DNA of 55,071 bases from assembly GCA_038496445.1 (NCBI GenBank), contig JALMLS010000467.1:1-55071 (forward strand), written 5' to 3'. Both the position numbers and the translations under genes were made by a program. Position 1 is the stretch's first letter. Every line of letters begins with the position of its first letter. The DNA comes from Trichosphaerium sp. ATCC 40318 (lineage: Eukaryota; Protista; Tubulinea). A model generated the notes under the pieces. It ran no database searches. It was not told the origin of the DNA and saw only the letters and a program-made list of their open reading frames with translations. Shown piece after piece: positions 31,105-53,124 of this stretch.

Positions 31105-33682
31105 CTAGTAAGATAAATCATTATAAAGTACTTGCTTTCGGCCACAAGGGCCAGTCAAAGCCCCATATTCATCCCGTATTGAATGCCTACTGCTGTAAGG
31201 ATTCTCGCTACCATATCCAGAGTAGGAGCTTCTAGAAGCAGAATATCCTCTTCTGTTTGCTGGAGCATAACTTCGACTTGCTGAAGTACATCTTCCGTAA
31301 TCACCTGCAGGAGGTCCTTCCATGCGGTTATACGAACTTCTTGCTCCATATTGACTTCTAGATGAGGTGTCTGAGCCAGAATAAGGTCCAGGTCTATGAG
31401 AATAATCGTATGAAGGTGGTTGTATTCCACCTGTGCGTTGTTTATTAGAGCGAGCCTTTCGTCTTTCTTTCGCTCTATTGACGTTTCTGAAATGAGATTG
31501 AAGAGTTGTATTTGTATTTGATTCTAAGCTATCGTTGTATAAAGGTTTTTCAAAATGGTGAGATGTCATAAACTCGTTGAAAGTACTAGAGAAGAGTAAA
31601 TACATTTGAAAAACAAAAGTAAGAAAAAAGCTGGAAAGTAAAATAAAGAAAATATAGCCATTAATGGTCACAAGTGTAGCTTTGTTTCCAAATAAAGAAA
31701 AAATATAATTCAGTATTACGTACTCTGATTGAACTCCATAATGGAACTTAGCTTGGTAAACCAAGTTCTTATCATTGGAGAGAAGCCAAACATCTTTCGA
31801 TACATTATTTCTTGTAAAATACAACGCACAATTTATGATCCACTCATCGCTTGTGCGTGGATCCATGCCCTTTTGGTTATGTTAGAAACGCTATACTAAC
31901 TAATGCAACACAAGAAAAACGGCACAAATCAAAAATAATGTGGTGCACCAGCGAGCTTTTTTCTTCGAATTAGGGCTGTAGTTTGCAAAAAAAACAGTGA
32001 ACAAATACGTACACGATTGAGCTGATAGAACTCCATTTGTCTTTGACCTCTAATATATGGGGAGCTTCTTGTGTTAAACAAAAAGTCATTGGCATGACGT
32101 GCGTCTGCACGTGTATTTGGACTTGAATTATTCTTTAACCCATCAAGTTCTCGGGACACTACAAAAAAACCCAGTCAACAATACAACTAACAAATCACGT
32201 GAAAGAACACGTGACATAAAAAAACAACTTTGGTTGGGTGTCCCAAAGATAATTCATATAGGGGTACGTACCAGCAAGAGGAACAATGATAGAAACGCAC
32301 TTTAAGTCCTCTATAAACTTGATTTGACACAGCTGACTTAAATAGCAATTGGTGTCTATGATCAATACAGTATCACCTGAAATCAACGTGTAAGGATAAC
32401 GTGCTCAACGAAAAACAAGAAAAAGGTAAATCTCGTACATGTGACAGCTGTGTCTTTTGGTTTTTTTGCGTCCTTAACAAGTTGTTCCCATGTCTCAGCT
32501 TCCTCCTGTTTCACTTTAAGCCTCTTGTTTAGCTGAGTACATAGTTGCTCATAGTGTCCGGTGGAGGTCTTTAATTTATCCACTGTCTCTTGCAGCTTTA
32601 TAGCTTTACGCTTTGCTGTATGTAGAAGATCACCAGACGTCTTTGCTGCTAAGGCATAGAGCTTAACATGCTTTGTCTTCTGCTTCAAAATCGTTGTTTG
32701 CTGCTTCTCCTTTTGCAACCGCTTCTGTAGAGCAAAAACGCGGGTTCTTAACGTTCGAGGTGTCATTGTGAGTAACTCAGGCATTGTAACTAAAATAAGA
32801 CGAAAGCTCTGTGAGAAGTAACCCAAAAAATCAGTTTTGGTTTCGTACCTATTTTTGGAGTTGCTGGAGTCGCTGGTGTTGATGGAGTTGTTGGTGAGTG
32901 TTTGGATTTGACGGGAGTCTTGAAACTATCAGCAGGTAAAGTATCCGTAGGTGTCGGTTTCTTAGTAGGTGTTTTGGCAACAGAGACCTTCGCCTTTGGG
33001 GTTACTGCACGTGTGACGACAGGTTTTGGTTTTGAAGTAGTTTGAATCTTTGGTTCAGGCTTGCTCGAAGCCACTGCTTCTCGTTTGATAGGTGGTTCAG
33101 AAGCCTAGAGTATACTTAGATAGTGAACCACAACGCGCACTATGAGGTTCGTACTTGCTTAGATTTTTCTTCTGCTTCACGTGGTTGTTTGGCCGCATTT
33201 AGCTGCTTGGGTTGTCTTGAAAGGTTTCGTTCCTAGTTAAAAATGAACAGCCGTTACAAATCCAAAAATAAAAAAGACGAAAATATCTTACAGAAGAACT
33301 CAAGAAGCTAATTTGAATTGGTTTAACAACTTTAAGCGTTACGCTCTCAGATAGCGATGGATTGGCGATAGTTGCTTTCGGTTTGGATTTACTTTTTGAA
33401 AGGTCGCTAGATAGCGCTTGAGGACGCGTTTTAGAGCGAGTGCGCTTGCTGATGTTCGCTTTGACACGTTACTTTGGAGAAATGAACTGAAACGTACTTG
33501 GTAGCTGTTTGGCTTTTTTAGGAGTTTTAAAGCCTGCACGCACAGACCTTGCCGTGTTGTCACGGTTGTCAATATCTTTTTGACTCAGACCAGCCAAAGG
33601 GCGCCTTTCACATACATTAGACGCTGTAGCGTAGCGTTAAACAAAAAAGACGAGTTTCTCACCTAGTTTTAGCGCTTATCAT
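31105..33682 (-). CDS. PIN-domain protein (Swt1/SMG6-like PIN) with basic and Pro/Thr-rich N-terminus, coiled coil and G/S/Y/R-rich tail
   Basis: TVLIIDTNCYL, IIVPLAV-SRELDGLK, ARHANDFL, SDEWIINCA and VWLLSNDKNL give the acidic PIN active-site pattern. Confidence 0.8.
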
Positions 33683-38208: not shown

Positions 38209-38232
38209 GTTAGTTTATTGTTATTTTGTTAA

Positions 38233-38298
38233 GGCAGGTCATTGAACAAAGCGCCCTAAAGTCGCATTCTCTTCCCCTGAAGATTGTTCGATTCTGCC
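38233..38298 (-). ncRNA. Structured 3' UTR (multi-stem) of the retroelement
   Basis: Nested pairings GGCAG/CUGCC and GAACAA/UUGUUC enclose a UCUUC-AGGG-GAAGA hairpin and a weaker GCG...CGC hairpin. Confidence 0.65.
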
Positions 38299-38310
38299 GT
38301 GTTAGATTTA

Positions 38311-41300
38311 TTATTTACCTCTATCAATTGGAAAAATTTCAGTAATTGGTATATTACCGTATCTGATATTCCAGCGTATGTAATCTGTGCTTACGTATTG
38401 TTTAAGGTGTTTCTTTATTTTTATTGTTCTATTGCACCTTACGCGGTATTTTTCGTATAGTAATCTCGTATATAATGTGTTGAGTTTATTCGCTAATTTT
38501 GTGGCAGATGCAGGTTCGATTTCGAAGTTTGTTTCTAGTTCTTTTACAAATTTTTTAGTTACGTATCCTTGTGCTCCACGGTATAGGTTCGGGTCGTTAG
38601 CTTCTTCTTCAGTAGTGAATATCCATTTCACTTTGAATGGTTTTGGGTTATTAATTTCTTTTTTTCCTATTATCGCTAGTTCTAATCTTTCGTTTGACGG
38701 TTCCTCCTTTCGGAACCATTTACATTTACAGAAGGAGTTCTTTGGGTTCACAATATTGTTGTATTTCTTTTTATTGCTTACTTTATCCTCTACGTTGTTT
38801 TTTAGGTGTTCTTGCGTTATTCGGTTTGCGTGATGTTGCAGTCTTTCAAAGAAGTATGTTGAGTGACATAAGACAAAGTGCGTAAAGTTTTCTTCTTTTT
38901 CTAATTTCTTACGGGATTGGCATATAGAACAAAAAGGATTAGGGTACATTTTCATGTATCTCGCTTGAGTGATTGGGAATTTTATATGTTTACCTTTTTT
39001 ATGCATGAAATTATTTAATGGAAGGCCGTTGCTTCTTACTTTTAACAGCCATGACGATATCGTTCTGTCAATATGTAGTTTATTTTCTGTAACGCTGGCT
39101 TTGAAATTGATATTTTTTCTCGTTCTACAGTGTTTGTTAGAGTTCTCTTCGAGTTTGTCGAAAAAATATTCTGTAAAGCTATTTGTTACATGTTCTCTCA
39201 ATCCTGATTCAAGTATGGATCCATTGAACGTTATATTCCAGTTTGGTAGACCTTTTGGGATTCCTATAACTTTATTGTTACTTCTTTCTTTATCCGCTAG
39301 TTTGTCTGCTTTAAAATTCATTAGTAAGAGTTTTTGCGTGATGATGGTACCGTGTTTACTTTCCAGTTGTTTGATTCGTTTAACGATATTAGGTTTATTA
39401 GCTTTTATTTTATCTTCTAGGGTGTGACTAGGCACCCATAAGAATCTAATTGGTTCCGATCTTTTATTAATTTCTCTGTGGATTCTGTTAATGGTATGGT
39501 AATGCGGTTTGTTTATCTTTTTCTTTTTTGGCCAGTTATTCCAGTTGATGATAGATTCTATTGCTGATGTACAGTCTGAGGCAATCATTATTTTGGTGTC
39601 TAATGGAGATATTTTTAGTACTACTTCTATTGCTTCTAATTCCGCGTTAATTGACGTTTTGTTAAATAAAACTGGGAGGCTAATGTTGATATTATTTGGG
39701 GCATATATGCCTATACCTGCTTCGCCTTTATTTGATAGAGAGCCATCTGTAGCTATTGTGATATATTCATTGATGATGAGAGCGTTATTGTTGAATTCGG
39801 TTTTATCTCTTCTTGTCATTTTTCTTTCTATCTTTGATAATTCGTAATTGTGTTGTAATCTTAGGCCTGTTTTTTTTAGTAATTCTGAGGCAATCGTTAC
39901 CGAGTCTGAGTTTATATCAATATCTAATTCTTCATTTGTATTACATGAGGTACAGTACGTGGGTGAAGAGAAACATCTTCTTTCCGTGATTTTCCGTAGT
40001 GCTATATTGTCTGAATTTAGGCATTTTGAGATTAGGTTATTAACGTAACCCACTGTCTGATTTACGAAGAGGGATTTTAGGTTAGCGCCTGTAAGGGGTA
40101 TTAGGAATCTTGCATTGAGAAGGTTATGACGTAGTTTGGCTGAGCCTTTAATTATACCTATTGCGTTGTTGTCCATTTCGTTAAGTGCTTCATTTCCCAA
40201 AAAGATCGAGGTGCTTACAAAATCTACAGCTGGATTAATTACTGTATTGATTAGTTTAACTTTGTTGTGTACCGATAGTTTATTAGACCAAAGCGTCTTA
40301 AGTCTTTTTCTGTGAGTAGCAACTGTTTTATTTATCTGTTTTGTAAAGTCAAGGTTTGCATTCGTTAAAATACCTAGGTCTTTGTAATTTGTTTTTTCGT
40401 CTATGACCGGTATGATTTTGTCTTTCCAGATTAATGATGGTATGTTTTTCAAGTTTACGTACTTGTTGTATGTTAGGGCTGATTTGGAGCAGTTTATTTC
40501 CATTCCGAAAAAAGAGCACCATTTTTTTAGTATTTTGAACATTTTTTCCATGTCTTGTTTAGATTTGGCCATAATTTTCAGGTCATCCGCATATGCTAGC
40601 ACTGCAATTATGATATCTGACCACATATACCCCAGGTTAGATTGTTCTAATTCTTTAAGTAAGACGTTAATGAAAAGGGAGAAAAGGATAGGGCTTATTA
40701 CGTCACCTTGTCTAACGCCTTTGTTTATGGGAAATTTCTTTGATCCTACTGGGATATTTAACTCTGTACTCACATCTTTCAGTAGGGACATAATTATGTC
40801 GCACCATTCTTTGGATAGTCCTTGTATTTTCAGTGCTGCCAGAAGGGCCCAGAATTGTACCGAATCGTAAGCCTTCTTGAAATCTATGTAAAGGATAAAT
40901 AAAGGTTTTTTTTTTAAATTTGCGTCTTCTAGTATTTGGTGATACATTTTGTGAGCCATGTGGATCGATCTATTGTTATAGAACCCAAATTGGAAATCTG
41001 ATATTACCTTGTTCCTCCTTAGGATACTTGTTAGTCTCTTCGTTATAAGTGTGCTGTAGATTTTGTACATCGAGTTTAAGAGGCATATTGGGCGGTATTG
41101 TGAGACGTCATCCTTTTTCTGTTTGTTTTTTTCAAGAAGGATCATCGTTGATTCTTTCCATTGCCCTGGTATTTTCTTTGTTTTGAGGCATATGTTGCAT
41201 AAGTTCTTTATTATTTTTATATTGTCGTATGAAAGTTCTTTATATATTTCGGCTCCTAGGCCAGTCGTACCTGGTGCTTTGAAAGACTTCATCTGTTTTA

Positions 41301-44300
41301 TAATTGTGGTTATTTCTAGCGTATTTATACTACATATTTCCTGATTGTATATCGTGTTGAAACTAGCTTTAAAGTTAGGAGGTCTTGAGAGTGTAGGTAT
41401 TGGACATTTTTTACTTTGGTCTTTGTATGGGTGATCGAAGTTGCTTTCAAATAGTTTAGACCAAAAGCTATAAAACTCATTGAAGATGGATTCGTCATCG
41501 TTCATTATTATTGGAATACCGTCGATTGAGCTTATAACACTTTCTGTGAAAGAGTTAGTTCCTTTTTTGTCGTTGAATTGTTTTAAATATTTGTATTTCT
41601 TGTATACCGTACGGTTCGATAGTTCTGAAAGTTCATCTATTGATCTGTCTACGCAGATTTTCTTCATGTTGTTTGTGAGGGCTTTGATCCAATGATTTAG
41701 TAAATTCGTGTTCTTTTTTAATATGATTTTTTGTACCGAGTTTTTTTCTTCAATTCTTGGGATCCTTAGGAGTTTGTTTTCTTCAGCTTTGTCCATCCAT
41801 TTATTTACTTTGTTTATATTTCTATTGATAGGTCTATTAGGTTCCTCATTAGTTATTTGGTTATTGATCTTTCTACACATATTTTTTAGGCTTTTTAATC
41901 TTTTATGTTCTGAGTGTTCCACGTACGGTTTTCTGTTGTGATTGTTGTTTCTGATTCCTACTTCTCTAGCTGTGTATTTAAATAATTCTTTTGTAAAATT
42001 CGTTACTGCTCTGTCGACATAAATGTCACTTAGGTACTCGTCTTCTCCTGCATTTTTAATTAAATTCATAGTGTAGTCAGAGGGAGAGAAGAGAGGGATT
42101 TTGAGCTTTAGCTTTGGACTTCTCGTGTTTAGTTTCTTCTTTGTTTTTCTTGTCTTGGGTGTGTTCTTTACTTTGCTACATGGGATGAAACGTGTTGTCA
42201 ATATAATTGGTTTATGATCTGATGCGCACTCGTCTAATATTGTAATTAGTGATGATGTTTTTTTGGGATTTGTGGTTAACGCGAAGTCGATTCTTTCATG
42301 GAGTGTACCTTTACCATATTTCTTTATTTTTGTATTTAGTTTGAAGGTAAGACTCTTAGTACAGTTCTTTAAGTGATCTATTGGGTCTGTAAGGCCGTTA
42401 TGTAACTTAAATGTATTGAGAATGTTTTCGTACTTTGTTTTGATTTCTATGAATTTTTCGTTGAACCAAAATTGTTTATCTTTGTCGTATTGGGCCATAT
42501 TCCAGTCCCCTATGAGTATTACGTTATTGATATCCTTATTTTTGTTTGTCATTTTTTTTGTGAACTTACTGATGATTTCGAGTTGTTCGATTTTGTTGTG
42601 GATTTTATAAGCGCATAGATACACATTGTATATTAGCGTTAGTTTGTTGTCTTTGTTTTTGATGGTGATGGCTTGGAAGAAATTATTTGGATGACTAATT
42701 ATTTTTGTAACTTTCATTAGCTCCTTGTGAACGAGGATTGCGAGGCCGCCTTTTGCTCTTGCCGATTTCGTTGTTAGTTTGTTTTTTAGGTCTATTTTTT
42801 CTGCATCAGACCAAGACATGTTATCTATGAGATCAGAGTTAGTCTTCATGTACGTGTTATTTATTTCATTTCTATTTGGGACGTTTGCGAAGAATTTGAA
42901 GTTTATGAAGTGTTTTTTGAGTACTTTGTTGAAGGCGTCGCTCTTTATTTGTTCCGTGGATCTATGTATTTCTTGAAGGCATATGATATCTAGGTTATTA
43001 TTTTCGATTAGTGCTTTCACATTGCTTGATTTAGTTTCTATCCTACCTTTAATGTTCCATGAGGCAATGTTTATCTTGTTTTTGTATGATTTCGTAGTTT
43101 TTTGTTTGCCTCCTCCTCTTAGACGCCTTATAATTGTTATTTTGTTATTGATAAGCGTACTTACGCGTGACGATGTAGTAACGTACTTGAAACAGGAGAG
43201 AAAGAAAAAGTCGTCAATCTTGGCATCAGAGTTAGGTTTCATTATGTTATTTAGGAGCGTACTTATCTTTATATCATAGTGACATGTGTAGAGGGTGGAA
43301 AAGAAGCCGTTGATTTGGATGGTCTTTGGTTTTCTAAATTTGAGGACTTGACAAATATTGTGAACTATACGTGGTATGATTAATCGATTAATACAAATGT
43401 TAGAGGAAAAACCATGTTTATTAGGTATCTTAACATGTACGAAAAGGGGCTTTCGGTTGAACTCTAAAAATAATTTGGGTCTTAATGCTGTCGTAGCGCG
43501 TCGTGCATCGTATCTAGAATCTTTTATCGCCAAAACGAAGAAGTCTTTGTTTCTTGTTAATCTTGAGAGAGAACATTCCTTTGAACTGTCTTTCAACAGT
43601 CTTCTTAGCAGATACACTACCGAAACTGACAATATAATGCGATGTCTTGTTACCTTTTGCTGTGCAATCATAGCAAATACTGCGGGCGTATACCTAATAT
43701 CCTTAGAAGCTATGTAAGTTGTTTTTGTTACCTTAATTTCAGCGAGTGCAATTAAAATATCTTTAGGAGTGCCCATCCATGTCTTACCAAGATACAAGGA
43801 GAGATTCTTGTCAAATTTCATTCTACAAGGAATAAAGCGACCGAACCCATTATCTTCTGCTAGAGCAAGGTGATATCCAGCGTTCTTGAGGACTGTAACT
43901 ACTGAGCTCTTGTTTTGGTTTGGAGCTAAGATAATATCGGCGATAAATGACGTCCTTGATATTCCGTGGTTCGAATACGTTTGAGAGTCTACTATTACCG
44001 CTGGTTTTGGAGCATTGGGTTTCCATTTGGTCAAGATGTCGTTAACATTGAAGGGCTCGGTGTTACTCCATAGCGTCAGTATACGGCAGTTCATGAAATC
44101 TTCCATATAGCGAAGGAAATCAATCAACGTTTTGGTTCTGTCGATATCGAAGAAGGTATGAGCACTGGCAGGAATCAAGTTCTTTCTCAGCGTATCTTTG
44201 AAGAATTTGACTTCTTCTAAGTACGCTTCAGGAACAGTACCAATTTTCAAACCAAAAACGAATGCGCAATGACCATGTGGAAGGGGAACTGATGCGTAAC

Positions 44301-46131
44301 CAACATATCCTATAGCATGATGAGTATTTGTTAACATTAAATAAAACTGTTTTTTTAGATTTTTTGTATTTTCGTAATTACTGCAATTGTTTACATTGTA
44401 TTTTACAGTGCGAGAGGTATTGATATTTTTGAAGGTGTTGAAACGGGCATAGTTTAGTTCGTATTTTTTGAAAACAAGGGAGGATTTAGTTTTTAGTTTA
44501 GAGAAAATGTTCGTTTTAGATTTGTTTAATACTACATTTTCAGAAAAGGAAAGAGAGTGAAGAGATAATGTCTTCTTTTGTTTAAAAGAGGAGAAAATAT
44601 AAAAGCGAATCTTAAAAATAGGGTTTACGTTACCTTTAGTTAGCCAGTTTCTGAATTTAGTAGGTAACTCTATCATCTTATTAACATCGATATCGGGAGA
44701 TATTGGACCGCCTGGGTAGAAAACACCGAAAGCCGCTGAGAAGTGGATGAGCTGTGTCCATTCCACCAAGCGACCATAGCGCGTCGAAAGATCAACCTTA
44801 TCTGGGTCATGTTGTTCGTTTGCAAAGATACCATCCTCGTCCTGAAGAGAGATTAGGATTTTTTGGAGTTTGAGAAAAAGAAAAGAAGGTGATACAATAC
44901 TTACTTCCTCGTCCTTGTTGGATGCATTAACAAAAGAGAGGAGAAGGTTTATATTCTCTTGTTCTTCTCTCTTTGTAATGGAATCCAGGACTTGTTTTTC
45001 GAGGGTTGCTTTGAAGGGACTATCTTGGAGTGATCCTAGTCTTACCATAGCTTCTTCACGGGTCATATTGGCGAAACCATTGAGACGATTGTTGTTGTTA
45101 TTTGCAGACATGTTGTGTATGTGTTGATGAGGCGACAAAAAGGATAAGGACTGAAAATAAATTATTTTATTAATTTTATTATATGTCCGTCGGGAGTTTA
45201 TGGGGGAGTGTGGTTTTCCATCACTTGTGTTATATTTGTTTCTGTTGTATCTTTTTTTGAGATTTGGCTTTGCCGTAAAATGTTTACTTCTACTTCTTTT
45301 ATTCTTGATTTCTGAACATTCGTTGGAGTAATTTGTGTTGTTATTTGGGGTGTTGTTTAGGGACATTATGAGTTCTGGTAAGATTTGAAAAGCTATTATG
45401 CGAAAATATAAAGAGACGAGAGGGAGAATTTTAAAGTTTACTGTACTTACCTTTTTGTAATGTACGTTGTTACGCGTTTTGCAATTGTGTGGGATTTTTG
45501 TATTTTCTGTAAGAAGGAGGAGCAAGATAAATGTAATACTTGGTAACGTTACGGTTGCCAGGATTAAAGGTTTGGGTAGATTTGTTTTTATTACGTTTTT
45601 TACAACATTTTTTACTAATCTTGAGGGGAAAGAGGTATATGTGAGGTTGTGGTAACTAAGCGTTTTGTGTTTTGTGTGTTTTCTGTAGATGAATTCCGTG
45701 TTTATCTTAATTTGTCTATTCTCTTGATGGTAATGAGGTTGATTTATACGTACTGGCACGGTGTCTGTTACTAGTCTTTTGTGGTTTGGGTTGTATCTTT
45801 CGAAAGATTTTGTGTTTGGGTTGCATATGTCTATCGACGATAGGTACAAACCTAACACTAGAATTCTCATTATGATTATTGATATTTTCTTAAGGTTAAT
45901 TCTCGATTTTTGGGGAGAAGCTCGAACTCGCTTCTTCGCTACACCGCGGCACCTTATGGTATAAGCCTTGGCCGGTGTAATTGCACGATATTCCCTCGAT
46001 TTTTTTTTGTTTTTTGTTTTTTGTTTTTGTTTACGGGGAACTTGTTCCCCGACCAGCACGTTAGCCGACGGTTGCAAAACTTTTTGGCCATCGACCAACG
46101 TACCGGTTCCTTTTGACGTTGTCGATGGCAT
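38311..46131 (-). CDS. 2606-aa retrotransposon polyprotein: leader + ORF1-like region + RLRGG + APE endonuclease + RT + RNase H + zinc knuckle
   Basis: APE: ASWNIKG, CLQEIH, GDWN, ERIDFAL, SDHKPI. RT: KAPG, YRPICLL, DFKKAYDSV, GVRQGDVISP, YADD (40582-40593). RNase H: ATDGS, AELEAI, SDC, WVPSH, N..AD.LA. Knuckle: C-x2-C...H-x3-C. Confidence 0.95.
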   Translation of the reverse strand: MPSTTSKGTGTLVDGQKVLQPSANVLVGEQVPRKQKQKTKNKKKSREYRAITPAKAYTIRCRGVAKKRVRASPQKSRINLKKISIIIMRILVLGLYLSSIDICNPNTKSFERYNPNHKRLVTDTVPVRINQPHYHQENRQIKINTEFIYRKHTKHKTLSYHNLTYTSFPSRLVKNVVKNVIKTNLPKPLILATVTLPSITFILLLLLTENTKIPHNCKTRNNVHYKKVSTVNFKILPLVSLYFRIIAFQILPELIMSLNNTPNNNTNYSNECSEIKNKRSRSKHFTAKPNLKKRYNRNKYNTSDGKPHSPINSRRTYNKINKIIYFQSLSFLSPHQHIHNMSANNNNNRLNGFANMTREEAMVRLGSLQDSPFKATLEKQVLDSITKREEQENINLLLSFVNASNKDEEVSIVSPSFLFLKLQKILISLQDEDGIFANEQHDPDKVDLSTRYGRLVEWTQLIHFSAAFGVFYPGGPISPDIDVNKMIELPTKFRNWLTKGNVNPIFKIRFYIFSSFKQKKTLSLHSLSFSENVVLNKSKTNIFSKLKTKSSLVFKKYELNYARFNTFKNINTSRTVKYNVNNCSNYENTKNLKKQFYLMLTNTHHAIGYVGYASVPLPHGHCAFVFGLKIGTVPEAYLEEVKFFKDTLRKNLIPASAHTFFDIDRTKTLIDFLRYMEDFMNCRILTLWSNTEPFNVNDILTKWKPNAPKPAVIVDSQTYSNHGISRTSFIADIILAPNQNKSSVVTVLKNAGYHLALAEDNGFGRFIPCRMKFDKNLSLYLGKTWMGTPKDILIALAEIKVTKTTYIASKDIRYTPAVFAMIAQQKVTRHRIILSVSVVYLLRRLLKDSSKECSLSRLTRNKDFFVLAIKDSRYDARRATTALRPKLFLEFNRKPLFVHVKIPNKHGFSSNICINRLIIPRIVHNICQVLKFRKPKTIQINGFFSTLYTCHYDIKISTLLNNIMKPNSDAKIDDFFFLSCFKYVTTSSRVSTLINNKITIIRRLRGGGKQKTTKSYKNKINIASWNIKGRIETKSSNVKALIENNNLDIICLQEIHRSTEQIKSDAFNKVLKKHFINFKFFANVPNRNEINNTYMKTNSDLIDNMSWSDAEKIDLKNKLTTKSARAKGGLAILVHKELMKVTKIISHPNNFFQAITIKNKDNKLTLIYNVYLCAYKIHNKIEQLEIISKFTKKMTNKNKDINNVILIGDWNMAQYDKDKQFWFNEKFIEIKTKYENILNTFKLHNGLTDPIDHLKNCTKSLTFKLNTKIKKYGKGTLHERIDFALTTNPKKTSSLITILDECASDHKPIILTTRFIPCSKVKNTPKTRKTKKKLNTRSPKLKLKIPLFSPSDYTMNLIKNAGEDEYLSDIYVDRAVTNFTKELFKYTAREVGIRNNNHNRKPYVEHSEHKRLKSLKNMCRKINNQITNEEPNRPINRNINKVNKWMDKAEENKLLRIPRIEEKNSVQKIILKKNTNLLNHWIKALTNNMKKICVDRSIDELSELSNRTVYKKYKYLKQFNDKKGTNSFTESVISSIDGIPIIMNDDESIFNEFYSFWSKLFESNFDHPYKDQSKKCPIPTLSRPPNFKASFNTIYNQEICSINTLEITTIIKQMKSFKAPGTTGLGAEIYKELSYDNIKIIKNLCNICLKTKKIPGQWKESTMILLEKNKQKKDDVSQYRPICLLNSMYKIYSTLITKRLTSILRRNKVISDFQFGFYNNRSIHMAHKMYHQILEDANLKKKPLFILYIDFKKAYDSVQFWALLAALKIQGLSKEWCDIIMSLLKDVSTELNIPVGSKKFPINKGVRQGDVISPILFSLFINVLLKELEQSNLGYMWSDIIIAVLAYADDLKIMAKSKQDMEKMFKILKKWCSFFGMEINCSKSALTYNKYVNLKNIPSLIWKDKIIPVIDEKTNYKDLGILTNANLDFTKQINKTVATHRKRLKTLWSNKLSVHNKVKLINTVINPAVDFVSTSIFLGNEALNEMDNNAIGIIKGSAKLRHNLLNARFLIPLTGANLKSLFVNQTVGYVNNLISKCLNSDNIALRKITERRCFSSPTYCTSCNTNEELDIDINSDSVTIASELLKKTGLRLQHNYELSKIERKMTRRDKTEFNNNALIINEYITIATDGSLSNKGEAGIGIYAPNNINISLPVLFNKTSINAELEAIEVVLKISPLDTKIMIASDCTSAIESIINWNNWPKKKKINKPHYHTINRIHREINKRSEPIRFLWVPSHTLEDKIKANKPNIVKRIKQLESKHGTIITQKLLLMNFKADKLADKERSNNKVIGIPKGLPNWNITFNGSILESGLREHVTNSFTEYFFDKLEENSNKHCRTRKNINFKASVTENKLHIDRTISSWLLKVRSNGLPLNNFMHKKGKHIKFPITQARYMKMYPNPFCSICQSRKKLEKEENFTHFVLCHSTYFFERLQHHANRITQEHLKNNVEDKVSNKKKYNNIVNPKNSFCKCKWFRKEEPSNERLELAIIGKKEINNPKPFKVKWIFTTEEEANDPNLYRGAQGYVTKKFVKELETNFEIEPASATKLANKLNTLYTRLLYEKYRVRCNRTIKIKKHLKQYVSTDYIRWNIRYGNIPITEIFPIDRGK
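43417..43422 (-). terminator. Candidate polyadenylation signal of the nested ORF1 transcript
   Basis: AATAAA ~90 nt after the spliced-ORF1 stop; weak alone because the strand is A-rich. Confidence 0.4.
43514..45111 (-). CDS. Nested spliced ORF1-like gene (~390 aa, RRM-like folds); exons 45111-44905, 44841-44634, 44309-43732, 43693-43514
   Basis: Introns: 44904-44842 (GTAAGT...CTAAT...TTCAG, 63 nt), 44633-44310 (GTAACG...TAG, 324 nt), 43731-43694 (GTAACA...CTAAG...TTAG, 38 nt). Exons total 1173 nt and end in TAG. The last exon completes a beta-alpha-beta-beta-alpha-beta pattern. Confidence 0.75.
45150..45183 (-). promoter_or_regulatory. Candidate internal Pol II core promoter (TATA + initiator)
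   Basis: TATAATAAAA begins at 45183, 31 nt upstream of the A (45152) of TCAGT; ATG in an ACAAC context 41 nt further downstream. Confidence 0.5.
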
Positions 46132-46151
46132 AGATCTTGTTTTATTTAATT

Positions 46152-46202
46152 AGCGTCGTTGCCCAGGGTGAACTGCGTGGAAGTCGCTGGTGTTGTCACC
46201 CC
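46152..46202 (-). ncRNA. Minimal HDV-like self-cleaving ribozyme (no P4), 51 nt
   Basis: GGGGUGA(P1)-CAACACC-AGCG(P2)-ACU(P3)-UCCACGC(L3)-AGU(P3')-UCACCCU(P1', G1.U wobble)-GG(P1.1)-GCAA-CGA(J4/2)-CGCU(P2'); G1 abuts the TSD. Confidence 0.88.
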
Positions 46203-46215
46203 TTTCGGAGTTTTA
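46203..46215 (+). repeat. Target-site duplication, right copy (TTTCGGAGTTTTA)
   Basis: Identical to 38196-38208. Confidence 0.92.
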
Positions 46216-48848: not shown

Positions 48849-51800
48849 ATGTCAGAAACACCAATAAGCACTTTAAGCCAGAATTTAGTGCTCCATATGT
48901 ATCCGATCATATTTTTTTTTTGTCTGTAATTATAAGTAGTACTGTACGCGTATTTCTTTGACTCCACTAGCAAAAACATAAAGGGTAGCGTAGAAAAGTT
49001 ACAAGTAAAGCCGTTAAGTCCCACAGTACTTCCTGAGCCCGACCACAGGTACTTTAGAGGGGCTACCCGAATTCTCGCAGTTTTTAACCAAATTGAGTGG
49101 ATATTTTTACATAAACGCGCGTATTAGCATCTAAACGTTGTATTTAGTTGGGCTAAAGAAATATGCGTATCCTGTAGTTTATTCACAAGCGCAACTTGCC
49201 TATGTGCACCACAATACACGCAATTCGCGTCTTTGGACAATCAAGAGTACAATTTTAACCAAAATATAACCTTTCCAATTAAATACAGGTAACTTCACCA
49301 TTCAGCGCCCATAAAATGTTCTACCTAGCTTATTAACTGTCAAACTGACATTCATTGTAGAGATTTGCCAATCGACAGCTTCTTATTTATTGCCATCTGG
49401 GGCGTTGCTAGTACGCGAGAATTTGTGCCTATAGCTTCAAACCTCTTGCCGCTTTTTGACAAGCAATCATGGTACAGACCGTTTTGAAAACCAAAAAACA
49501 ATTCCAAAAAAAAAAACAATAATGTTTAGCTTGGATTGATTTGACGTGTGATTTTTTAGGTTGATGCGTAGAGGAAGTCAAAAGCTTACCTTGTTTCTAT
49601 TGGATAGTAAATCTCTATCGTTGAGGACAGATAGCTTACACTACTCACATACAGAACACAAGAAAATACTGCAAAATGCACGTGATGAAATCATTTTTTG
49701 AAACTGAATTTTGTATTTTTTTGTTTTGTGCTCTTCAGCGAATTGTAAGAAATTCTTTTGTGACGATAATCTCAATCTATTTTCTTTAACACCATAAGAG
49801 CCAGAATTTCACAGGACAGTAATTGGCGTTAATCTGTTATTGATTCCTTTTTTTCTGCCTTCTAATTTGCTGTTTTTAGGTACTCCAACAGGCAGGTTTA
49901 GATAGTCTAACAAGAAGTACAGAACAGCCTCTTGGTATTGAACAGCTTAAAGAGCGCGGTATTGTACCGTTAGCAAATATGGACCCGTTTTTCCAAGATG
50001 AAGTTGCTCTGTTTGTTGAGCTTCCTGTACTCCGCAACCCAATAATCTTCTATCAAAACGTTCGTACTCTGTACACAATAATTACTTGTACTTACCTTAA
50101 CGTGTAGTTCTATGAGCAAGAAAACAGTGATATGGAGTACAAACATTCTTATCCTTTTGGTAGCTATGTTTTTGACCCTGAAACTTATTGTGACAACCCA
50201 GCTGATAAAGTACGCAACAAATACTCTCAAATACAATTACTTAAAGCAAACTCCTCAATCCTACAATGCACTTATTACCAATTTAGATGCATTGGAGTCT
50301 TATGCGCGCTGAAACAAGTGATTATGATGCAAGAAGACTTCTTCCTAATACAGACGAACGAAAGACAATACAGGTATAGCTCCTATGTTTTTTCTTTGTA
50401 GATGGAAGTATTTCTTTGTGTGACATGTGTTTTAACCTACGACCTTATTAGATGATATTGGCGTACCCGCCATCAAGGGAACTGAATAACCGTGAACAGA
50501 ATATTCTTTGGCGTTATAGATATTATCTTCAAAAAAACAAGAAAGCACTGACAAAGTTCCTTCGATCTTCTGTTCGTTGGAGTCAACAAAAAGGCAAAGA
50601 AGCTGTACAGCTTCTTAAAGAGTACGTACCTATACGATACTTTGATCAGTAAAATGATAGGTGGGAGGCATCCTCCGGCTGTTACAGGACGCTATGAATG
50701 TTGAAAAAATATTTTATTTACTAGTCATTAGGTGGGAACCTATTGAAACTGTTGATGCATTAGAGTTATTGTCAAAGGATTTTTCAAGTCTGCCTTGGCC
50801 TGAGATAAGCACAAAGATTAGACAATACGCAGCAAGCGTACTTAAGAAATCTTCAGACGAAGTACGTGTCAGAACAGTAGCCCTTTATTGTTTTTTTTGT
50901 ATATATACCATTAACCACTTTGTAGGAACTTCGCTATTGCTTGCTGCAACTTGTGCAAAGTCTGCGCTACGATCGTGTAGCTTCAACGTCTGCTGTTGTT
51001 GCGTTACTAATTGACCGAGCTTCAACTAGCTTTTACCTGGCTAATAACTTGTACTGGTATGCCTTCTTTTATTGACTCTGTTTTCTGTGAAGAAAAGTTT
51101 TTAATTTAGTTGATAGGTTTCTCACTGTTGAAAAAACGAGTACACTCAACGACAATGACGATGTAGAATTTTTTACTCAAGTTTTTGATATGTTTTGGAG
51201 AAAACTAAGCAAGGTAACGAATGGTTGTAGAAATAATTTTAAAAAAACCTTTTTAGTTTTCAATCTCATTTTTTTCTTCTTTCCTTTCTTGTCATTTCCA
51301 ACTTGCTTTGTTGCCTTTGTAAATGAAGTTACTTACTTGGTGTTAATGAATATCAATAGACGCCAAGTGGTCGTATCTTTCAAGGACACCTTCAAAAGCA
51401 GCATGAACTTGTTGATATTCTCACTTCTGTTGCAAATAAAATATCGTCAACAAGTGACTTTGATAAAAAGGTACAAACCAAACGACGTAAAAAACATTTT
51501 AGTTATTTTCAAATACTAATTTAAAAAAAAACAAGGAACGTATGGCTACAGCGGAAATAGAAAAAATATCCAATAAATTCACTGGTGTACCAATTCCTGC
51601 AAATCCTGAACTCATAATCCATAAGATAAAACGTAAGTAAAATATCTACTAAATTTCTAACTCGTGACTAACAACCCTGACACGTGGGGTTTTTTTGGAG
51701 TTATTTGTGTTCGGTTTTTTGTTAATTTGTTTATTTTAGCCAAAGTTAAGGTTTTTACATCAGCTCAAGCACCTATGAAGGTTGATATTATAACACAAGA

Positions 51801-53124
51801 TGATTCTGTATTCAGTATTATTTTTAAGCTTGGTGATGACTTACGACAAGATCAACTTATCATACAGGTAAAACAAATAACAAAACATAAAAAAAAACTG
51901 AAGGCGAACTTTTCAAATTTTGAATAACCGTCGCCCAAGTCTCCAAAATTTGTGAGGGCGGTAAAACATCATACCCAGATATTTATTGAATTAGCAATGG
52001 CCTATTCTATGTTTGATAACTGTAGTAAGCGCTGTCTAATGAATTTTTAGTTGATTTCATTAATGGACAATCTTTTGAAAGAAGAGAATTTGGACTTATC
52101 GTTACTTCCGTATGCTGTTCTAGCTACTTCTTCTAGTAGTGGTATGATTTTCCCATCTTCTTAATCAAACTATATTAATACTTACCGGATAGGAATGATA
52201 GAATTTGTCCCAAAGAGCCATAATATATCAAGCTACAAAAAAGATCTCAAAAAGTTTTTTATGAAGTACAGCCCAGATAGTACAGGTATGTCTCATTACC
52301 ACGTTGTATCTAGCCTAATAAGTGCTTACTTAAATACACAGGTCCTTATGGCATCAACCCTGCTGTACACGATACATACGTAAGGTCTCTAGGTACGTAA
52401 AAACCATAAGTATTTCGAGTGCTAATTGTTATTAGCTGGCTTTTCTGTTATAACTTATGTTCTTGGTATTGGTGATCGCCATTTGGATAACTTACTACTC
52501 ACCGAAAGCGGTAACTTTTTCCACATCGATTATGGATGGATACTCGGTACGACAAGAACAAAGAATAAGAGAAAATATTGCTCATAGTCTAATTTAGGTC
52601 ATGATCCTAAAGGATGGGAATCACCAATGGTATTAAATTGTTTCTGTCTATTTGCCTTATATTAAACAACCATACTCTCTAGCGCCTTACCTCAGAGATG
52701 ATAGATGTGTTGGGCGGGTACACAAGTGAACATTATGAGTCATTTGTACAGTATGGATGTTTGGCGTATAGCAAACTTCGGAAATCGGCGAATTTAATTT
52801 TTAATTTACTCTCACTGATGACTGATGCAAACTTGAAACATTTGACACGAAGAGGATTGCAAGAGGTATGTTACAGCTCGTATATATCATGTTTAGATTA
52901 TACTCAAAAGCTGATACACAATAGGTTGAGGATAGACTAGGACTGACGCTAACAGAGGTTGCTTCTATTGAACATATAAAGTCTATGATTGTTATCAGTG
53001 TTGAGGCGTTTGGACCAAAGGTAATACCTTATTTTATATTGTTCATTGTACATATTAATTTGATTAGGTCATTGAAATACTACATCACTTGAGGCAGAGA
53101 TTGTATAATGTTAAAACGCCTTAA
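48849..53124 (+). CDS. VPS34: Class III phosphatidylinositol 3-kinase (Vps34-like), multi-exon
   Basis: C2 ([12 protein letters not shown]), helical ([32 protein letters not shown]-like) and kinase ([45 protein letters not shown]) regions. Confidence 0.88.

What the first reader, a model, noticed from the sequence alone, without database searches (positions are those of the whole stretch)
38209..46202. LINE with a two-transcript design: a ribozyme-trimmed unspliced polyprotein RNA plus a nested, intron-containing ORF1 gene inside the same ORF
Seen: one 2606-codon ORF; a same-strand embedded gene with promoter-like motifs, three introns, its own stop and AATAAA; an HDV-like fold at base 1; RLRGG before APE; a perfect TSD. 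Established: non-LTR elements normally lack introns because they copy through RNA and usually express ORF1 and ORF2 from one bicistronic RNA. Intron retention is known for Penelope-like elements and spliced gag RNAs for copia-type LTR elements; L1Tc pairs an HDV ribozyme with a 2A peptide. Inference: a capped, spliced subgenomic mRNA makes ORF1p, while the unspliced full-length RNA is read through leader, exons and introns to reach Pol, which is then cut free. Only RNA retaining intron 3 encodes RT, so cis-preference would preserve that intron. I do not know of a described LINE with this combination.
Basis: partly seen in the sequence, partly recalled or inferred. Interest (0 to 1): 0.95.

Follow-up and report, generated by a model that had tools for sequence, protein, structure and literature searches.

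The report
LINE with intron-controlled ORF1/Pol switch
A young jumping gene (LINE) in this AT-rich protist carries three ordinary-looking introns in its first gene. Comparison with a diverged relative suggests that removing the last intron yields only the first protein, and keeping it lets translation run on into the copying enzyme. That strategy is known from plant copia elements, and I found no report of it for LINEs.

Summary
The described sequence features are all present. Window 38209-46202 (minus strand) is a 7,994-bp LINE encoding APE, RT and RNase H in one 2,606-codon frame, flanked by a 13-bp TSD. A second, near-identical copy elsewhere has its own TSD and all three introns, so intron-bearing RNA was copied recently.

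A relative with 54% amino-acid identity (contig C361) keeps GT..AG at the same three places. Intron lengths are 63/324/38 nt here and 72/177/47 nt there, the same classes modulo 3. After the third intron is removed, both elements encode a conserved 59-codon tail ending RF-stop at the same position. That frame is closed by the intron's own final TAG, which favours splicing over ribosomal frameshifting. The unspliced frame is also stop-free in both elements.

An AATAAA block after the ORF1 stop and an [L]xGG site before the endonuclease are also conserved. An HDV-like ribozyme core places its cleavage site at element base 1, but it scores below the Rfam threshold.

No RNA run was listed, so splicing, the internal promoter, ribozyme activity and LxGG cleavage remain inferences. 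The scan already noted similar intron switches in other LINE families of this genome.

The parts
38209..46202 (-). Full-length non-LTR retrotransposon, 7,994 bp
   Evidence: TSDs. A second copy, identical apart from one mismatch and a 153-bp tandem duplication, lies at C30 with its own 16-bp TSD and the same first base.
46203..46215 (-). 5' target-site duplication TAAAACTCCGAAA
38196..38208 (-). 3' target-site duplication TAAAACTCCGAAA
46052..46202 (-). Candidate HDV-like ribozyme, element nt 1-151. P1 1-7/32-38, P3 19-21/29-31, L3 UCCACGC, P1.1 CC/GG, J1/4 GGGCAAC, P4 base 45-49/133-137, J4/2 GCUAACG, P2 12-18/145-151.
   Evidence: Rfam RF00094 24.5 bits with cleavage site at nt 1. Pair counts, including the A15-U148 to G-C compensatory change in C361. 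A competing 20-bp hairpin appears in the MFE fold.
45863..46202 (-). 5' ~340 nt conserved at the RNA/DNA level rather than the protein level
   Evidence: 78% nt identity to C361. Mismatches are even over codon positions (13/16/14). Two further hairpins show compensatory changes.
45112..46131 (-). Leader: 340 stop-free codons from the 5'-proximal ATG (46131) to the ORF1 ATG. The peptide is not conserved.
   Evidence: The C361 leader pieces are also stop-free.
45153..45184 (-). AT-rich TATA-like motif about 45-70 nt upstream of the ORF1 ATG, partly conserved in C361. Candidate internal promoter.
   Evidence: inference
44905..45111 (-). ORF1 exon 1. Its ATG at 45111 has a conserved context ACAACATGTC.
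44842..44904 (-). Intron 1: 63 nt, GTAAGT..CAG, in frame, stop-free, 6% G
44634..44841 (-). ORF1 exon 2
44310..44633 (-). Intron 2: 324 nt, GTAACG..TAG, in frame, stop-free, 7% G
43732..44309 (-). ORF1 exon 3: 192 aa, an orphan domain
   Evidence: Codon-position bias 63/52/110. No relatives found.
43694..43731 (-). Intron 3: 38 nt, GTAACA..TAG, length 2 mod 3. The proposed frame switch.
43514..43693 (-). ORF1 exon 4: 59 codons plus TAG in the spliced frame. It overlaps the open unspliced frame, so the segment is dual-coding.
   Evidence: Spliced-frame tail 25/60 identical to C361, BLOSUM score 127. Unspliced frame 17/59, score 26. The stop falls at the same position in both.
43417..43422 (-). 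AATAAA inside a conserved ~27-nt block, 92 nt after the ORF1 stop. Candidate internal poly(A) signal.
43111..43122 (-). LRGG motif just before the endonuclease. Candidate processing site.
   Evidence: LKGG in C361. IKGG, LRGG and IIGG in three other LINE families.
42214..43065 (-). Apurinic/apyrimidinic-type endonuclease domain
   Evidence: PF03372, E 2.6e-9
40453..41118 (-). Reverse transcriptase domain
   Evidence: PF00078, E 2.8e-37
39421..39768 (-). RNase H domain
   Evidence: PF00075, E 3.2e-10
38209..38310 (-). 3' UTR ending AATAAACTAAC. There is no poly(A) tail. TAAC occurs once here and twice in the C30 copy.

Best explanation
This is a recently active, low-copy APE-type LINE (APE-RT-RNase H). 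Its ORF1 gene holds three spliceosomal introns that stay in the RNA used as transposition template.

Proposed mechanism (inferred unless marked):
- Removing intron 3 (38 nt, 2 mod 3) shifts reading into a conserved 59-codon tail and a stop. The product is a 390-aa ORF1 protein only. That RNA probably ends at a conserved AATAAA about 90 nt further on.
- If the introns are kept, one 2,606-codon frame runs from the 5'-proximal AUG through leader, exons and introns into Pol.
- Because only intron-retaining RNA encodes RT, cis-preference would keep the introns in the progeny. That intron-bearing RNA is copied is shown by two near-identical copies at different sites.
- The ratio of spliced to unspliced RNA would set the ORF1p:Pol ratio, as in plant Ty1/copia elements.

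Three add-ons are less certain:
- ORF1 mRNA may start at an internal promoter just upstream of its ATG (about 50%).
- An HDV-like ribozyme may cut the full-length RNA at base 1 (about 60%).
- Pol may be released after a conserved [L/I]xGG site by a ubiquitin-type protease (about 40-45%).
For: 1. Two copies (C265, C30) have different TSDs, differ otherwise by one mismatch and a 153-bp duplication, and both keep all introns.
2. The relative C361 has 54% aa identity over aa 312-2606. GT..AG is kept at the same three exon boundaries. Intron lengths are 72/177/47 against 63/324/38, giving the same residues mod 3.
3. Exons are 57-61% identical at nt level with coding-type third-position bias (63/52/110). 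Introns cannot be aligned as protein and are very G-poor: 6-7% in five of the six, 13% in the 38-nt intron 3.
4. The spliced-frame tail is gapless and ends RF-stop at the same codon. Its BLOSUM score is 127, against 26 for the unspliced frame. Mismatches by codon position are 30/21/34 in the spliced frame.
5. That frame is closed by the TAG forming the last 3 nt of intron 3 in both elements, and no slippery heptamer is present.
6. The unspliced frame is stop-free in leader and introns of both elements. The C361 leader is interrupted only by a nested TIR transposon, and its two open pieces are in compatible phase.
7. Host introns in HSP70 paralogs are 43-120 nt, with GTACGT or GTAAAT donors and mostly TAG acceptors, like those in the LINE.
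8. Conserved blocks: the AATAAACATGG block, the ATG context and an AT-rich motif.
9. Ribozyme evidence.
10. LxGG occurs in five families.
Against: - No RNA evidence: no RNA run was listed, so no junction, 5' end or poly(A) site was observed.
- There is only one diverged relative, so each covariation or conservation argument rests on a single pair.
- At 38 nt, intron 3 is shorter than any of the 13 host introns I measured (minimum 43 nt).
- Introns 1 and 2 could be variable in-frame linkers that happen to begin with GT and end with AG.
- The ribozyme scores below the Rfam gathering threshold, and a 20-bp hairpin competes with P2 and P4.
- The ubiquitin-like fold is not supported. Pfam gives no hit, the PDB profile hits have E about 1, and the AlphaFold models have pLDDT about 40.
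- No intron-less (processed) copies exist to prove that splicing occurs.
Confidence: 0.66

Rival explanations
1. One transcript only. There is no internal promoter. The full-length RNA is alternatively spliced. Translation always starts at the 5'-proximal AUG, giving leader-ORF1 fusion protein from spliced RNA and leader-ORF1-Pol from unspliced RNA.
For: The leader is in frame with ORF1 and stop-free in both elements. No transcription start was observed. The TTTCAG upstream of the ATG is not conserved, so nothing else marks a boundary there.
Against: Protein conservation starts exactly at the ORF1 ATG, whose context ACAACATGTC is conserved. An AT-rich motif 45-70 nt upstream is conserved inside an otherwise unalignable leader. 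The leader peptide itself is not conserved.
Confidence: 0.22
2. There is no splicing. The three segments are variable low-complexity linkers in a polyprotein. The conserved alternative-frame tail is reached by programmed ribosomal frameshifting, or is not expressed.
For: All three segments are translatable in frame. Length differences between the two families are multiples of 3. There are no RNA data.
Against: The alternative frame is closed by TAG immediately before the conserved tail in both elements. The local sequences (ATTAGGT and AATAGAT) are not slippery and not conserved. Donors and acceptors match the host consensus at all six sites. The segments have intron-like composition.
Confidence: 0.08
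3. The 5' end is set by transcription initiation from an internal promoter in the conserved 340-nt leader, as in Drosophila LINEs. The HDV-like resemblance is non-functional.
For: The Rfam score is only 24.5 bits against a threshold of 50. The MFE fold prefers a 20-bp hairpin that sequesters P2 and J4/2. No other LINE family in the genome carries the core motif. No same-strand host gene was identified upstream.
Against: The modelled cleavage site coincides to the base with the element's 5' end in three loci. L3 (UCCACGC) and J1/4 (GGGCAAC) nearly copy those of HDV. One compensatory double change preserves a 7-bp P2. L1Tc combines a promoter and an HDV-like ribozyme in the same 77 nt (PMC4035085), so the two readings are not exclusive.
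Confidence: 0.35

Closest known systems
Plant Ty1/copia elements (EVD; shGAG RNA) and BARE. Sources: PMC5580714, PMC3735527.
   Same: Gag and Pol sit in a single open frame. Alternative splicing coupled to premature termination yields a short RNA dedicated to the structural protein, and the unspliced RNA encodes Pol and is the template. Here the matching parts are intron 3, its own stop and a conserved AATAAA about 90 nt downstream.
   Different: Those are LTR elements replicating in virus-like particles. This is a non-LTR element copied by target-primed reverse transcription, where cis-preference ties template choice to the RNA that encodes RT. This element also has two additional in-frame introns and a translated leader.
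L1Tc/ingi of trypanosomatids. Source: PMC4035085.
   Same: A LINE with APE-RT-RNase H in one long ORF. An HDV-like ribozyme lies at nt 1 inside a conserved 5' hallmark that also acts as a promoter. The polyprotein is processed (2A peptide, from my own knowledge).
   Different: L1Tc has no introns and no separate ORF1 gene. It uses a 2A peptide rather than LxGG. The ribozyme here has a large P4 domain containing the start codon.
R2 and other LINEs with 5' HDV-like ribozymes. Sources: PMC3774820, PMC4908430.
   Same: The ribozyme cleavage site is the exact 5' end of the element. Large peripheral domains occur in HDV-like ribozymes.
   Different: R2 is site-specific, co-transcribed with rRNA, and has a restriction-like endonuclease. 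This element inserts at varied sites.
Retroelements with reported introns: Penelope-like elements, Tad, L1 (cryptic splicing) and TART antisense RNAs. Sources: PMC1636488, PMC8557442.
   Same: These are retroelements whose genomic copies carry spliceosomal introns or splice sites.
   Different: I found no report of multiple introns inside ORF1 that are kept open in frame, nor of a frame-switching intron deciding between ORF1 alone and ORF1-Pol.
Other LINE families of the same genome noted earlier by this scan (s1-390474, s1-406595).
   Same: Introns in ORF1, with the unspliced frame running on into Pol.
   Different: They are different families with unrelated ORF1. In the families I inspected (C47/C153) I did not see a conserved alternative-frame tail.

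Membership tests
APE-type non-LTR retrotransposon (LINE) | APE endonuclease and RT domains in one element | tested here: met
   PF03372 and PF00078, plus PF00075 RNase H
APE-type non-LTR retrotransposon (LINE) | Target-site duplications of variable sequence; independent copies | tested here: met
   13-bp TSD here and a 16-bp TSD at C30
APE-type non-LTR retrotransposon (LINE) | 5'-truncated copies and a simple 3' tail | tested here: met
   ~85-bp 3'-terminal fragments at C209 and C152. The tail is TAAC, one or two copies.
APE-type non-LTR retrotransposon (LINE) | Assignment to a named RT clade (I, Tad1, L1, Tx1 and others) | not testable with these tools
   No reference clade sequences were available. 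The nearest RTs are 32-35% identical and unnamed.
HDV-like self-cleaving ribozyme | Nested double pseudoknot core: P1 starting with a G-U pair, P3/L3, P1.1, J1/4 | tested here: met
   P1 7/7, P3 3/3 and P1.1 2/2 pairs in both intact families
HDV-like self-cleaving ribozyme | P2 closing helix and a catalytic C in J4/2 | tested here: inconclusive
   The 7-bp P2 (12-18/145-151) has one compensatory change, and GGCUAA precedes it. A 20-bp alternative hairpin competes. The P4-less P2 drops to 3/4 pairs in C361.
HDV-like self-cleaving ribozyme | Rfam RF00094 gathering score | tested here: not met
   24.5 bits against 50. No hit in the whole-window gathering search.
HDV-like self-cleaving ribozyme | Self-cleavage | not testable with these tools
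   Needs an in vitro transcription assay
Spliceosomal introns | GT..AG with host-like extended consensus and host-like length | tested here: met
   Six of six sites. At 38 nt, intron 3 lies just below the measured host range of 43-120 nt (n=13).
Spliceosomal introns | Position conserved in a relative while the sequence and length diverge | tested here: met
Spliceosomal introns | Exon-exon junctions in RNA | not testable with these tools
   No RNA run was listed
Ubiquitin-like domain fused before Pol | C-terminal LRGG-type motif at the domain end | tested here: met
   LRGG, LKGG, IKGG, LRGG and IIGG in five families
Ubiquitin-like domain fused before Pol | Beta-grasp fold or sequence membership in PF00240 | tested here: inconclusive
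   No Pfam hit. PF00240 hits in the genome do not include the LINE loci. The PDB profile search gives ISG15 and ubiquitin at E 1.2-1.4. AlphaFold pLDDT is 39-42.
Splicing-coupled subgenomic Gag RNA strategy (Ty1/copia type) | Alternative splicing that creates a stop, plus a premature poly(A) site downstream | tested here: inconclusive
   The sequence signals are present and conserved. RNA was not observed.

The most novel reading that the evidence does not exclude
A lineage of non-LTR retrotransposons keeps spliceosomal introns in ORF1 as a regulatory device. Intron retention versus splicing sets the ORF1p:Pol ratio and marks the RNA that will be copied. All retained introns and a 1-kb leader are held open in frame. 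A 5' HDV-like ribozyme holds the start codon, and a ubiquitin-type LxGG junction releases Pol. This would be a LINE counterpart of retroviral and copia Gag/Gag-Pol control.
Probability: 0.5. Interest if true: 0.88.

Novelty: new variant of a known kind. Interest (0 to 1): 0.8.

Why it matters
LINEs are textbook intron-free elements because they copy through processed RNA. They are thought to set the ORF1p:ORF2p ratio by inefficient reinitiation on a bicistronic RNA.

An element that keeps introns through retrotransposition, and is selected to stay translatable across them, would have three consequences:
- LINEs could use the host spliceosome as a Gag/Pol switch, convergent with copia elements.
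- Cis-preference could preserve introns.
- Unspliced, possibly uncapped, ribozyme-processed RNA would have to be exported and translated in this host.

It would also give a natural system for studying intron retention, control of a poly(A) site by a nearby splice donor, and a possible host-protease (LxGG) processing step in a retroelement.

Tried and rejected
- **ORF1 identity.** The 192-aa exon 3 has no Pfam hit. Among 1.84 billion representative proteins there was no true relative; the single hit is a repeat artefact. There was no ESM Atlas hit. The only genomic relatives are C30 and C361.
- **Ubiquitin-like fold.** Two AlphaFold jobs gave pLDDT 39 and 42, so fold search was not attempted. 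PDB profile searches were non-significant.
- **More ribozyme copies for covariation.** A core-motif pattern search found only the three known loci. Rfam found no HDV hit in three other LINE families or in two external relatives.
- **C478.** This is a decayed 248-bp 5' fragment and is uninformative.
- **Leader intron.** I considered a leader intron (GTAAGT at 45449 to TTTCAG at 45151) as the source of ORF1 mRNA. I rejected it because the acceptor is not conserved in C361.
- **Ribosomal frameshifting.** Rejected.
- **External relatives.** P0003 and P0005 (2,291 and 2,492 aa, single ORF) lack LxGG before the APE domain.
- **RT clade phylogeny.** Not possible without reference sequences.


Full report
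**1. What is there**

The minus strand of window 38311-46131 is one ORF of 2,606 codons. Pfam finds an APE-type endonuclease (aa 1023-1306), a reverse transcriptase (1672-1893) and RNase H (2122-2237). The element runs from 46202 to 38209. It is flanked by a perfect 13-bp duplication, TAAAACTCCGAAA.

The genome is 70.3 Mb in 642 contigs, and earlier notes of this scan call it an amoeba-like protist. It holds a second full-length copy on contig C30. That copy differs only by one base and an in-frame 153-bp tandem duplication in ORF1 exon 3. It has its own 16-bp TSD and starts at the same base, GGGGTGAC. The element has therefore transposed very recently, and the RNA that was copied carried everything described below.

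The remaining members of the family are a decayed 248-bp 5' fragment (C478), an internal fragment (C132) and roughly 85-bp 3' fragments.

**2. The key comparison**

Contig C361 holds a diverged relative, 54% amino-acid identical over aa 312-2606 and 67% nt identical in Pol. Its ORF1 exons align at 57-61% nt identity.

| | Intron 1 | Intron 2 | Intron 3 |
|---|---|---|---|
| This element, donor..acceptor | GTAAGT..CAG | GTAACG..TAG | GTAACA..TAG |
| C361, donor..acceptor | GTACAC..CAG | GTACGC..CAG | GTAAAT..TAG |
| This element, length (nt) | 63 | 324 | 38 |
| C361, length (nt) | 72 | 177 | 47 |
| Length modulo 3 (both) | 0 | 0 | 2 |

- All six boundaries sit at the edges of protein conservation.
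- The segments are G-poor: 6-7% G in five of the six and 13% in the 38-nt intron 3. Their GC is 0.21-0.36, against 0.35-0.45 for the exons.
- Introns I reconstructed in host HSP70 paralogs are 43-120 nt, with GTACGT, GTAAAT or GTACAC donors and mostly TAG acceptors. The LINE's signals therefore look like the host's. At 38 nt, intron 3 is just below my small sample of 13.

**3. The frame switch**

After intron 3 is removed, both elements read a gapless 59-codon tail that ends RF-stop at the same codon.

- The tail is 25/60 identical, BLOSUM62 score 127. The same nucleotides read in the unspliced frame give 17/59 and score 26.
- Mismatches by codon position are 30/21/34 in the spliced frame and 21/34/30 in the unspliced frame. 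The spliced frame is the one under protein-level selection.
- In both elements that frame is closed by the TAG that forms the last three bases of the intron. The local sequences are neither slippery nor conserved.

Splicing explains access to the tail far better than ribosomal frameshifting does. The spliced ORF1 would be 390 aa.

**4. The open frame through non-coding sequence**

| Segment | Stops, main frame | Stops, other two frames | Source |
|---|---|---|---|
| Leader, this element (340 codons) | 0 | 27 and 19 | |
| Intron 2, this element (108 codons) | 0 | 11 and 8 | |
| Intron 2, C361 | 0 | 3 and 6 | |

Intron 2 of this element was stop-free in about 0.08% of shuffles. All three introns of C361 are stop-free in the main frame.

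The C361 leader is interrupted by a nested 2,066-bp TIR transposon composite that has more than 40 copies genome-wide. The two leader pieces on either side are each stop-free, with 10/9 and 18/17 stops in the other frames. They are in phases that are continuous if the insertion plus a 2-bp duplication is discounted. I only counted this.

The leader peptide is not conserved, so selection appears to act on openness and not on the protein.

**5. Signals for a separate ORF1 mRNA**

- Protein conservation begins exactly at the ORF1 ATG (45111). Its context ACAACATGTC is conserved.
- An AT-rich motif 45-70 nt upstream is also conserved, inside an otherwise unalignable leader.
- Eight ATGs, five of them out of frame, precede this ATG on the full-length RNA.
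- Ninety-two nt after the ORF1 stop, a roughly 27-nt block around AATAAACATGG followed by a T-rich run is conserved within a poorly conserved linker. The element's own 3' end also carries AATAAA.

These features fit an internal promoter and an internal poly(A) site, but they are inferences. A single alternatively spliced transcript remains a live rival.

**6. The 5' end**

The first ~340 nt are 78% identical to C361. Mismatches are spread evenly over codon positions (13/16/14, against 63/52/110 in exon 3). Two further hairpins show compensatory changes: GGGGAA/TTCCCC becomes GGGGAG/CTCCCC, and GAAGC/GCTTC becomes GAAGT/ACTTC. The conservation is therefore at the RNA/DNA level.

Rfam's HDV ribozyme model matches at 24.5 bits, below the gathering score of 50 (E 0.16 in a 401-nt search). 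The modelled cleavage site falls exactly before G at 46202. The core is as follows:
- P1 is 7 bp and starts with a G-U pair.
- P3 is 3 bp.
- L3 is UCCACGC.
- P1.1 is CC/GG.
- J1/4 is GGGCAAC.

All of these are intact in both families.

A longer version keeps 7 of 7 pairs through an A-U to G-C double change. It has a P4 base at 45-49/133-137, GGCUAACG as J4/2, and P2 at 12-18/145-151. In this version the start codon lies inside the P4 domain. Large peripheral domains are known in HDV-like ribozymes (PMC4908430).

Against it, the MFE fold prefers a 20-bp hairpin (96-115/132-151) that would compete with P2 and P4. No further copies exist for covariation. Activity is untested.

**7. The LRGG site**

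RRLRGG|G lies 14 residues before the Pfam APE match begins. C361 has KLKGGGG. Three other LINE families of this genome have giant frames (2,135, 2,761 and 1,823+1,007 aa; RT about 42% identical). They carry RKIKGG, SKLRGGG and EPIIGGG at the same place. An [L/I]xGG junction is therefore conserved.

Whether the ~75 residues before it form a ubiquitin-like fold is unresolved:
- There is no Pfam hit.
- ISG15 and ubiquitin appear among only three PDB profile hits, aligned end to end up to the terminal GG, but at E about 1.
- The AlphaFold models have pLDDT about 40.

Cleavage by a host ubiquitin-type protease is a hypothesis. Two external single-ORF relatives lack the motif.

**8. What is known**

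- The closest functional analogue is plant Ty1/copia. [quoted passage not shown] BARE is similar (PMC3735527).
- L1Tc combines a promoter and an HDV-like ribozyme at nt 1 of a single-ORF LINE (PMC4035085).
- R2 ribozymes define the exact 5' end of the element (PMC3774820).
- Introns have been reported in transcripts of Tad, L1, Penelope and TART antisense RNA (PMC1636488).

My literature searches found no LINE with several ORF1 introns held open in frame, or with a frame-switching intron.

This scan had already flagged similar intron switches in other LINE families of the same genome (s1-390474, s1-406595). I did not re-examine those loci. In the C47/C153 pair that I did inspect, I saw no conserved alternative-frame tail.

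**9. Verdict**

The splice-dependent ORF1/ORF1-Pol switch and the retention of introns in the template have good comparative support, at about 0.65-0.8. The internal promoter, ribozyme activity and LxGG cleavage are plausible but unproven. No RNA data could be obtained.

Noticed in passing
L017/L018 (contig C361 18013-20078, minus strand): A 2,066-bp composite TIR DNA transposon (TIR CAGGGCTGAAACTCAAC) is nested in the leader of the relative LINE. Its ~1,035-bp unit has more than 40 genomic copies at 96-100% identity, so it is a very young, abundant MITE-like family.
   Followed up: partly
L019 (contig C30 14340-14645 approx.): The second LINE copy carries an in-frame 153-bp tandem duplication inside ORF1 exon 3 (element nt 2130-2282). 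This lengthens the frame to 2,663 codons (stop to stop).
   Followed up: partly
L065 (C47), L066 (C153), L067 (C99): Three further LINE families have giant single frames of 2,761, 1,823+1,007 (one TGA) and 2,135 aa. Each has an [L/I]xGG(G) motif 10-25 aa before the APE domain. The 5' ~280 nt of C47 and C153 are conserved in all three frames, which indicates RNA-level conservation.
   Followed up: partly
window 38209-38222 vs L019: The element has no poly(A) tail. It ends AATAAACTAAC, with TAAC once here and twice in the C30 copy, which looks like a short microsatellite-type 3' tail.
   Followed up: no
window 50661-51927 (+): ORF pieces here carry PI3-kinase-like motifs (the [11 protein letters not shown] type). 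They look like exons of a host PI3K gene on the strand opposite to the LINE.
   Followed up: no
window 31108-31866 (-): A 253-aa ORF has a PIN_4 domain match (E 7.9e-6).
   Followed up: no
L044-L047 (host HSP70 paralogs): Host introns are short (43-120 nt). Donors are mostly GTACGT, and acceptors are mostly TAG rather than CAG.
   Followed up: partly
window 46087-46128 (element nt 75-116 region): The start codon of the long ORF sits at the base of a perfectly conserved 9-bp (extendable to 13-bp) hairpin, GCCAUCGAC/GUCGAUGGC. This could affect translation initiation.
   Followed up: no
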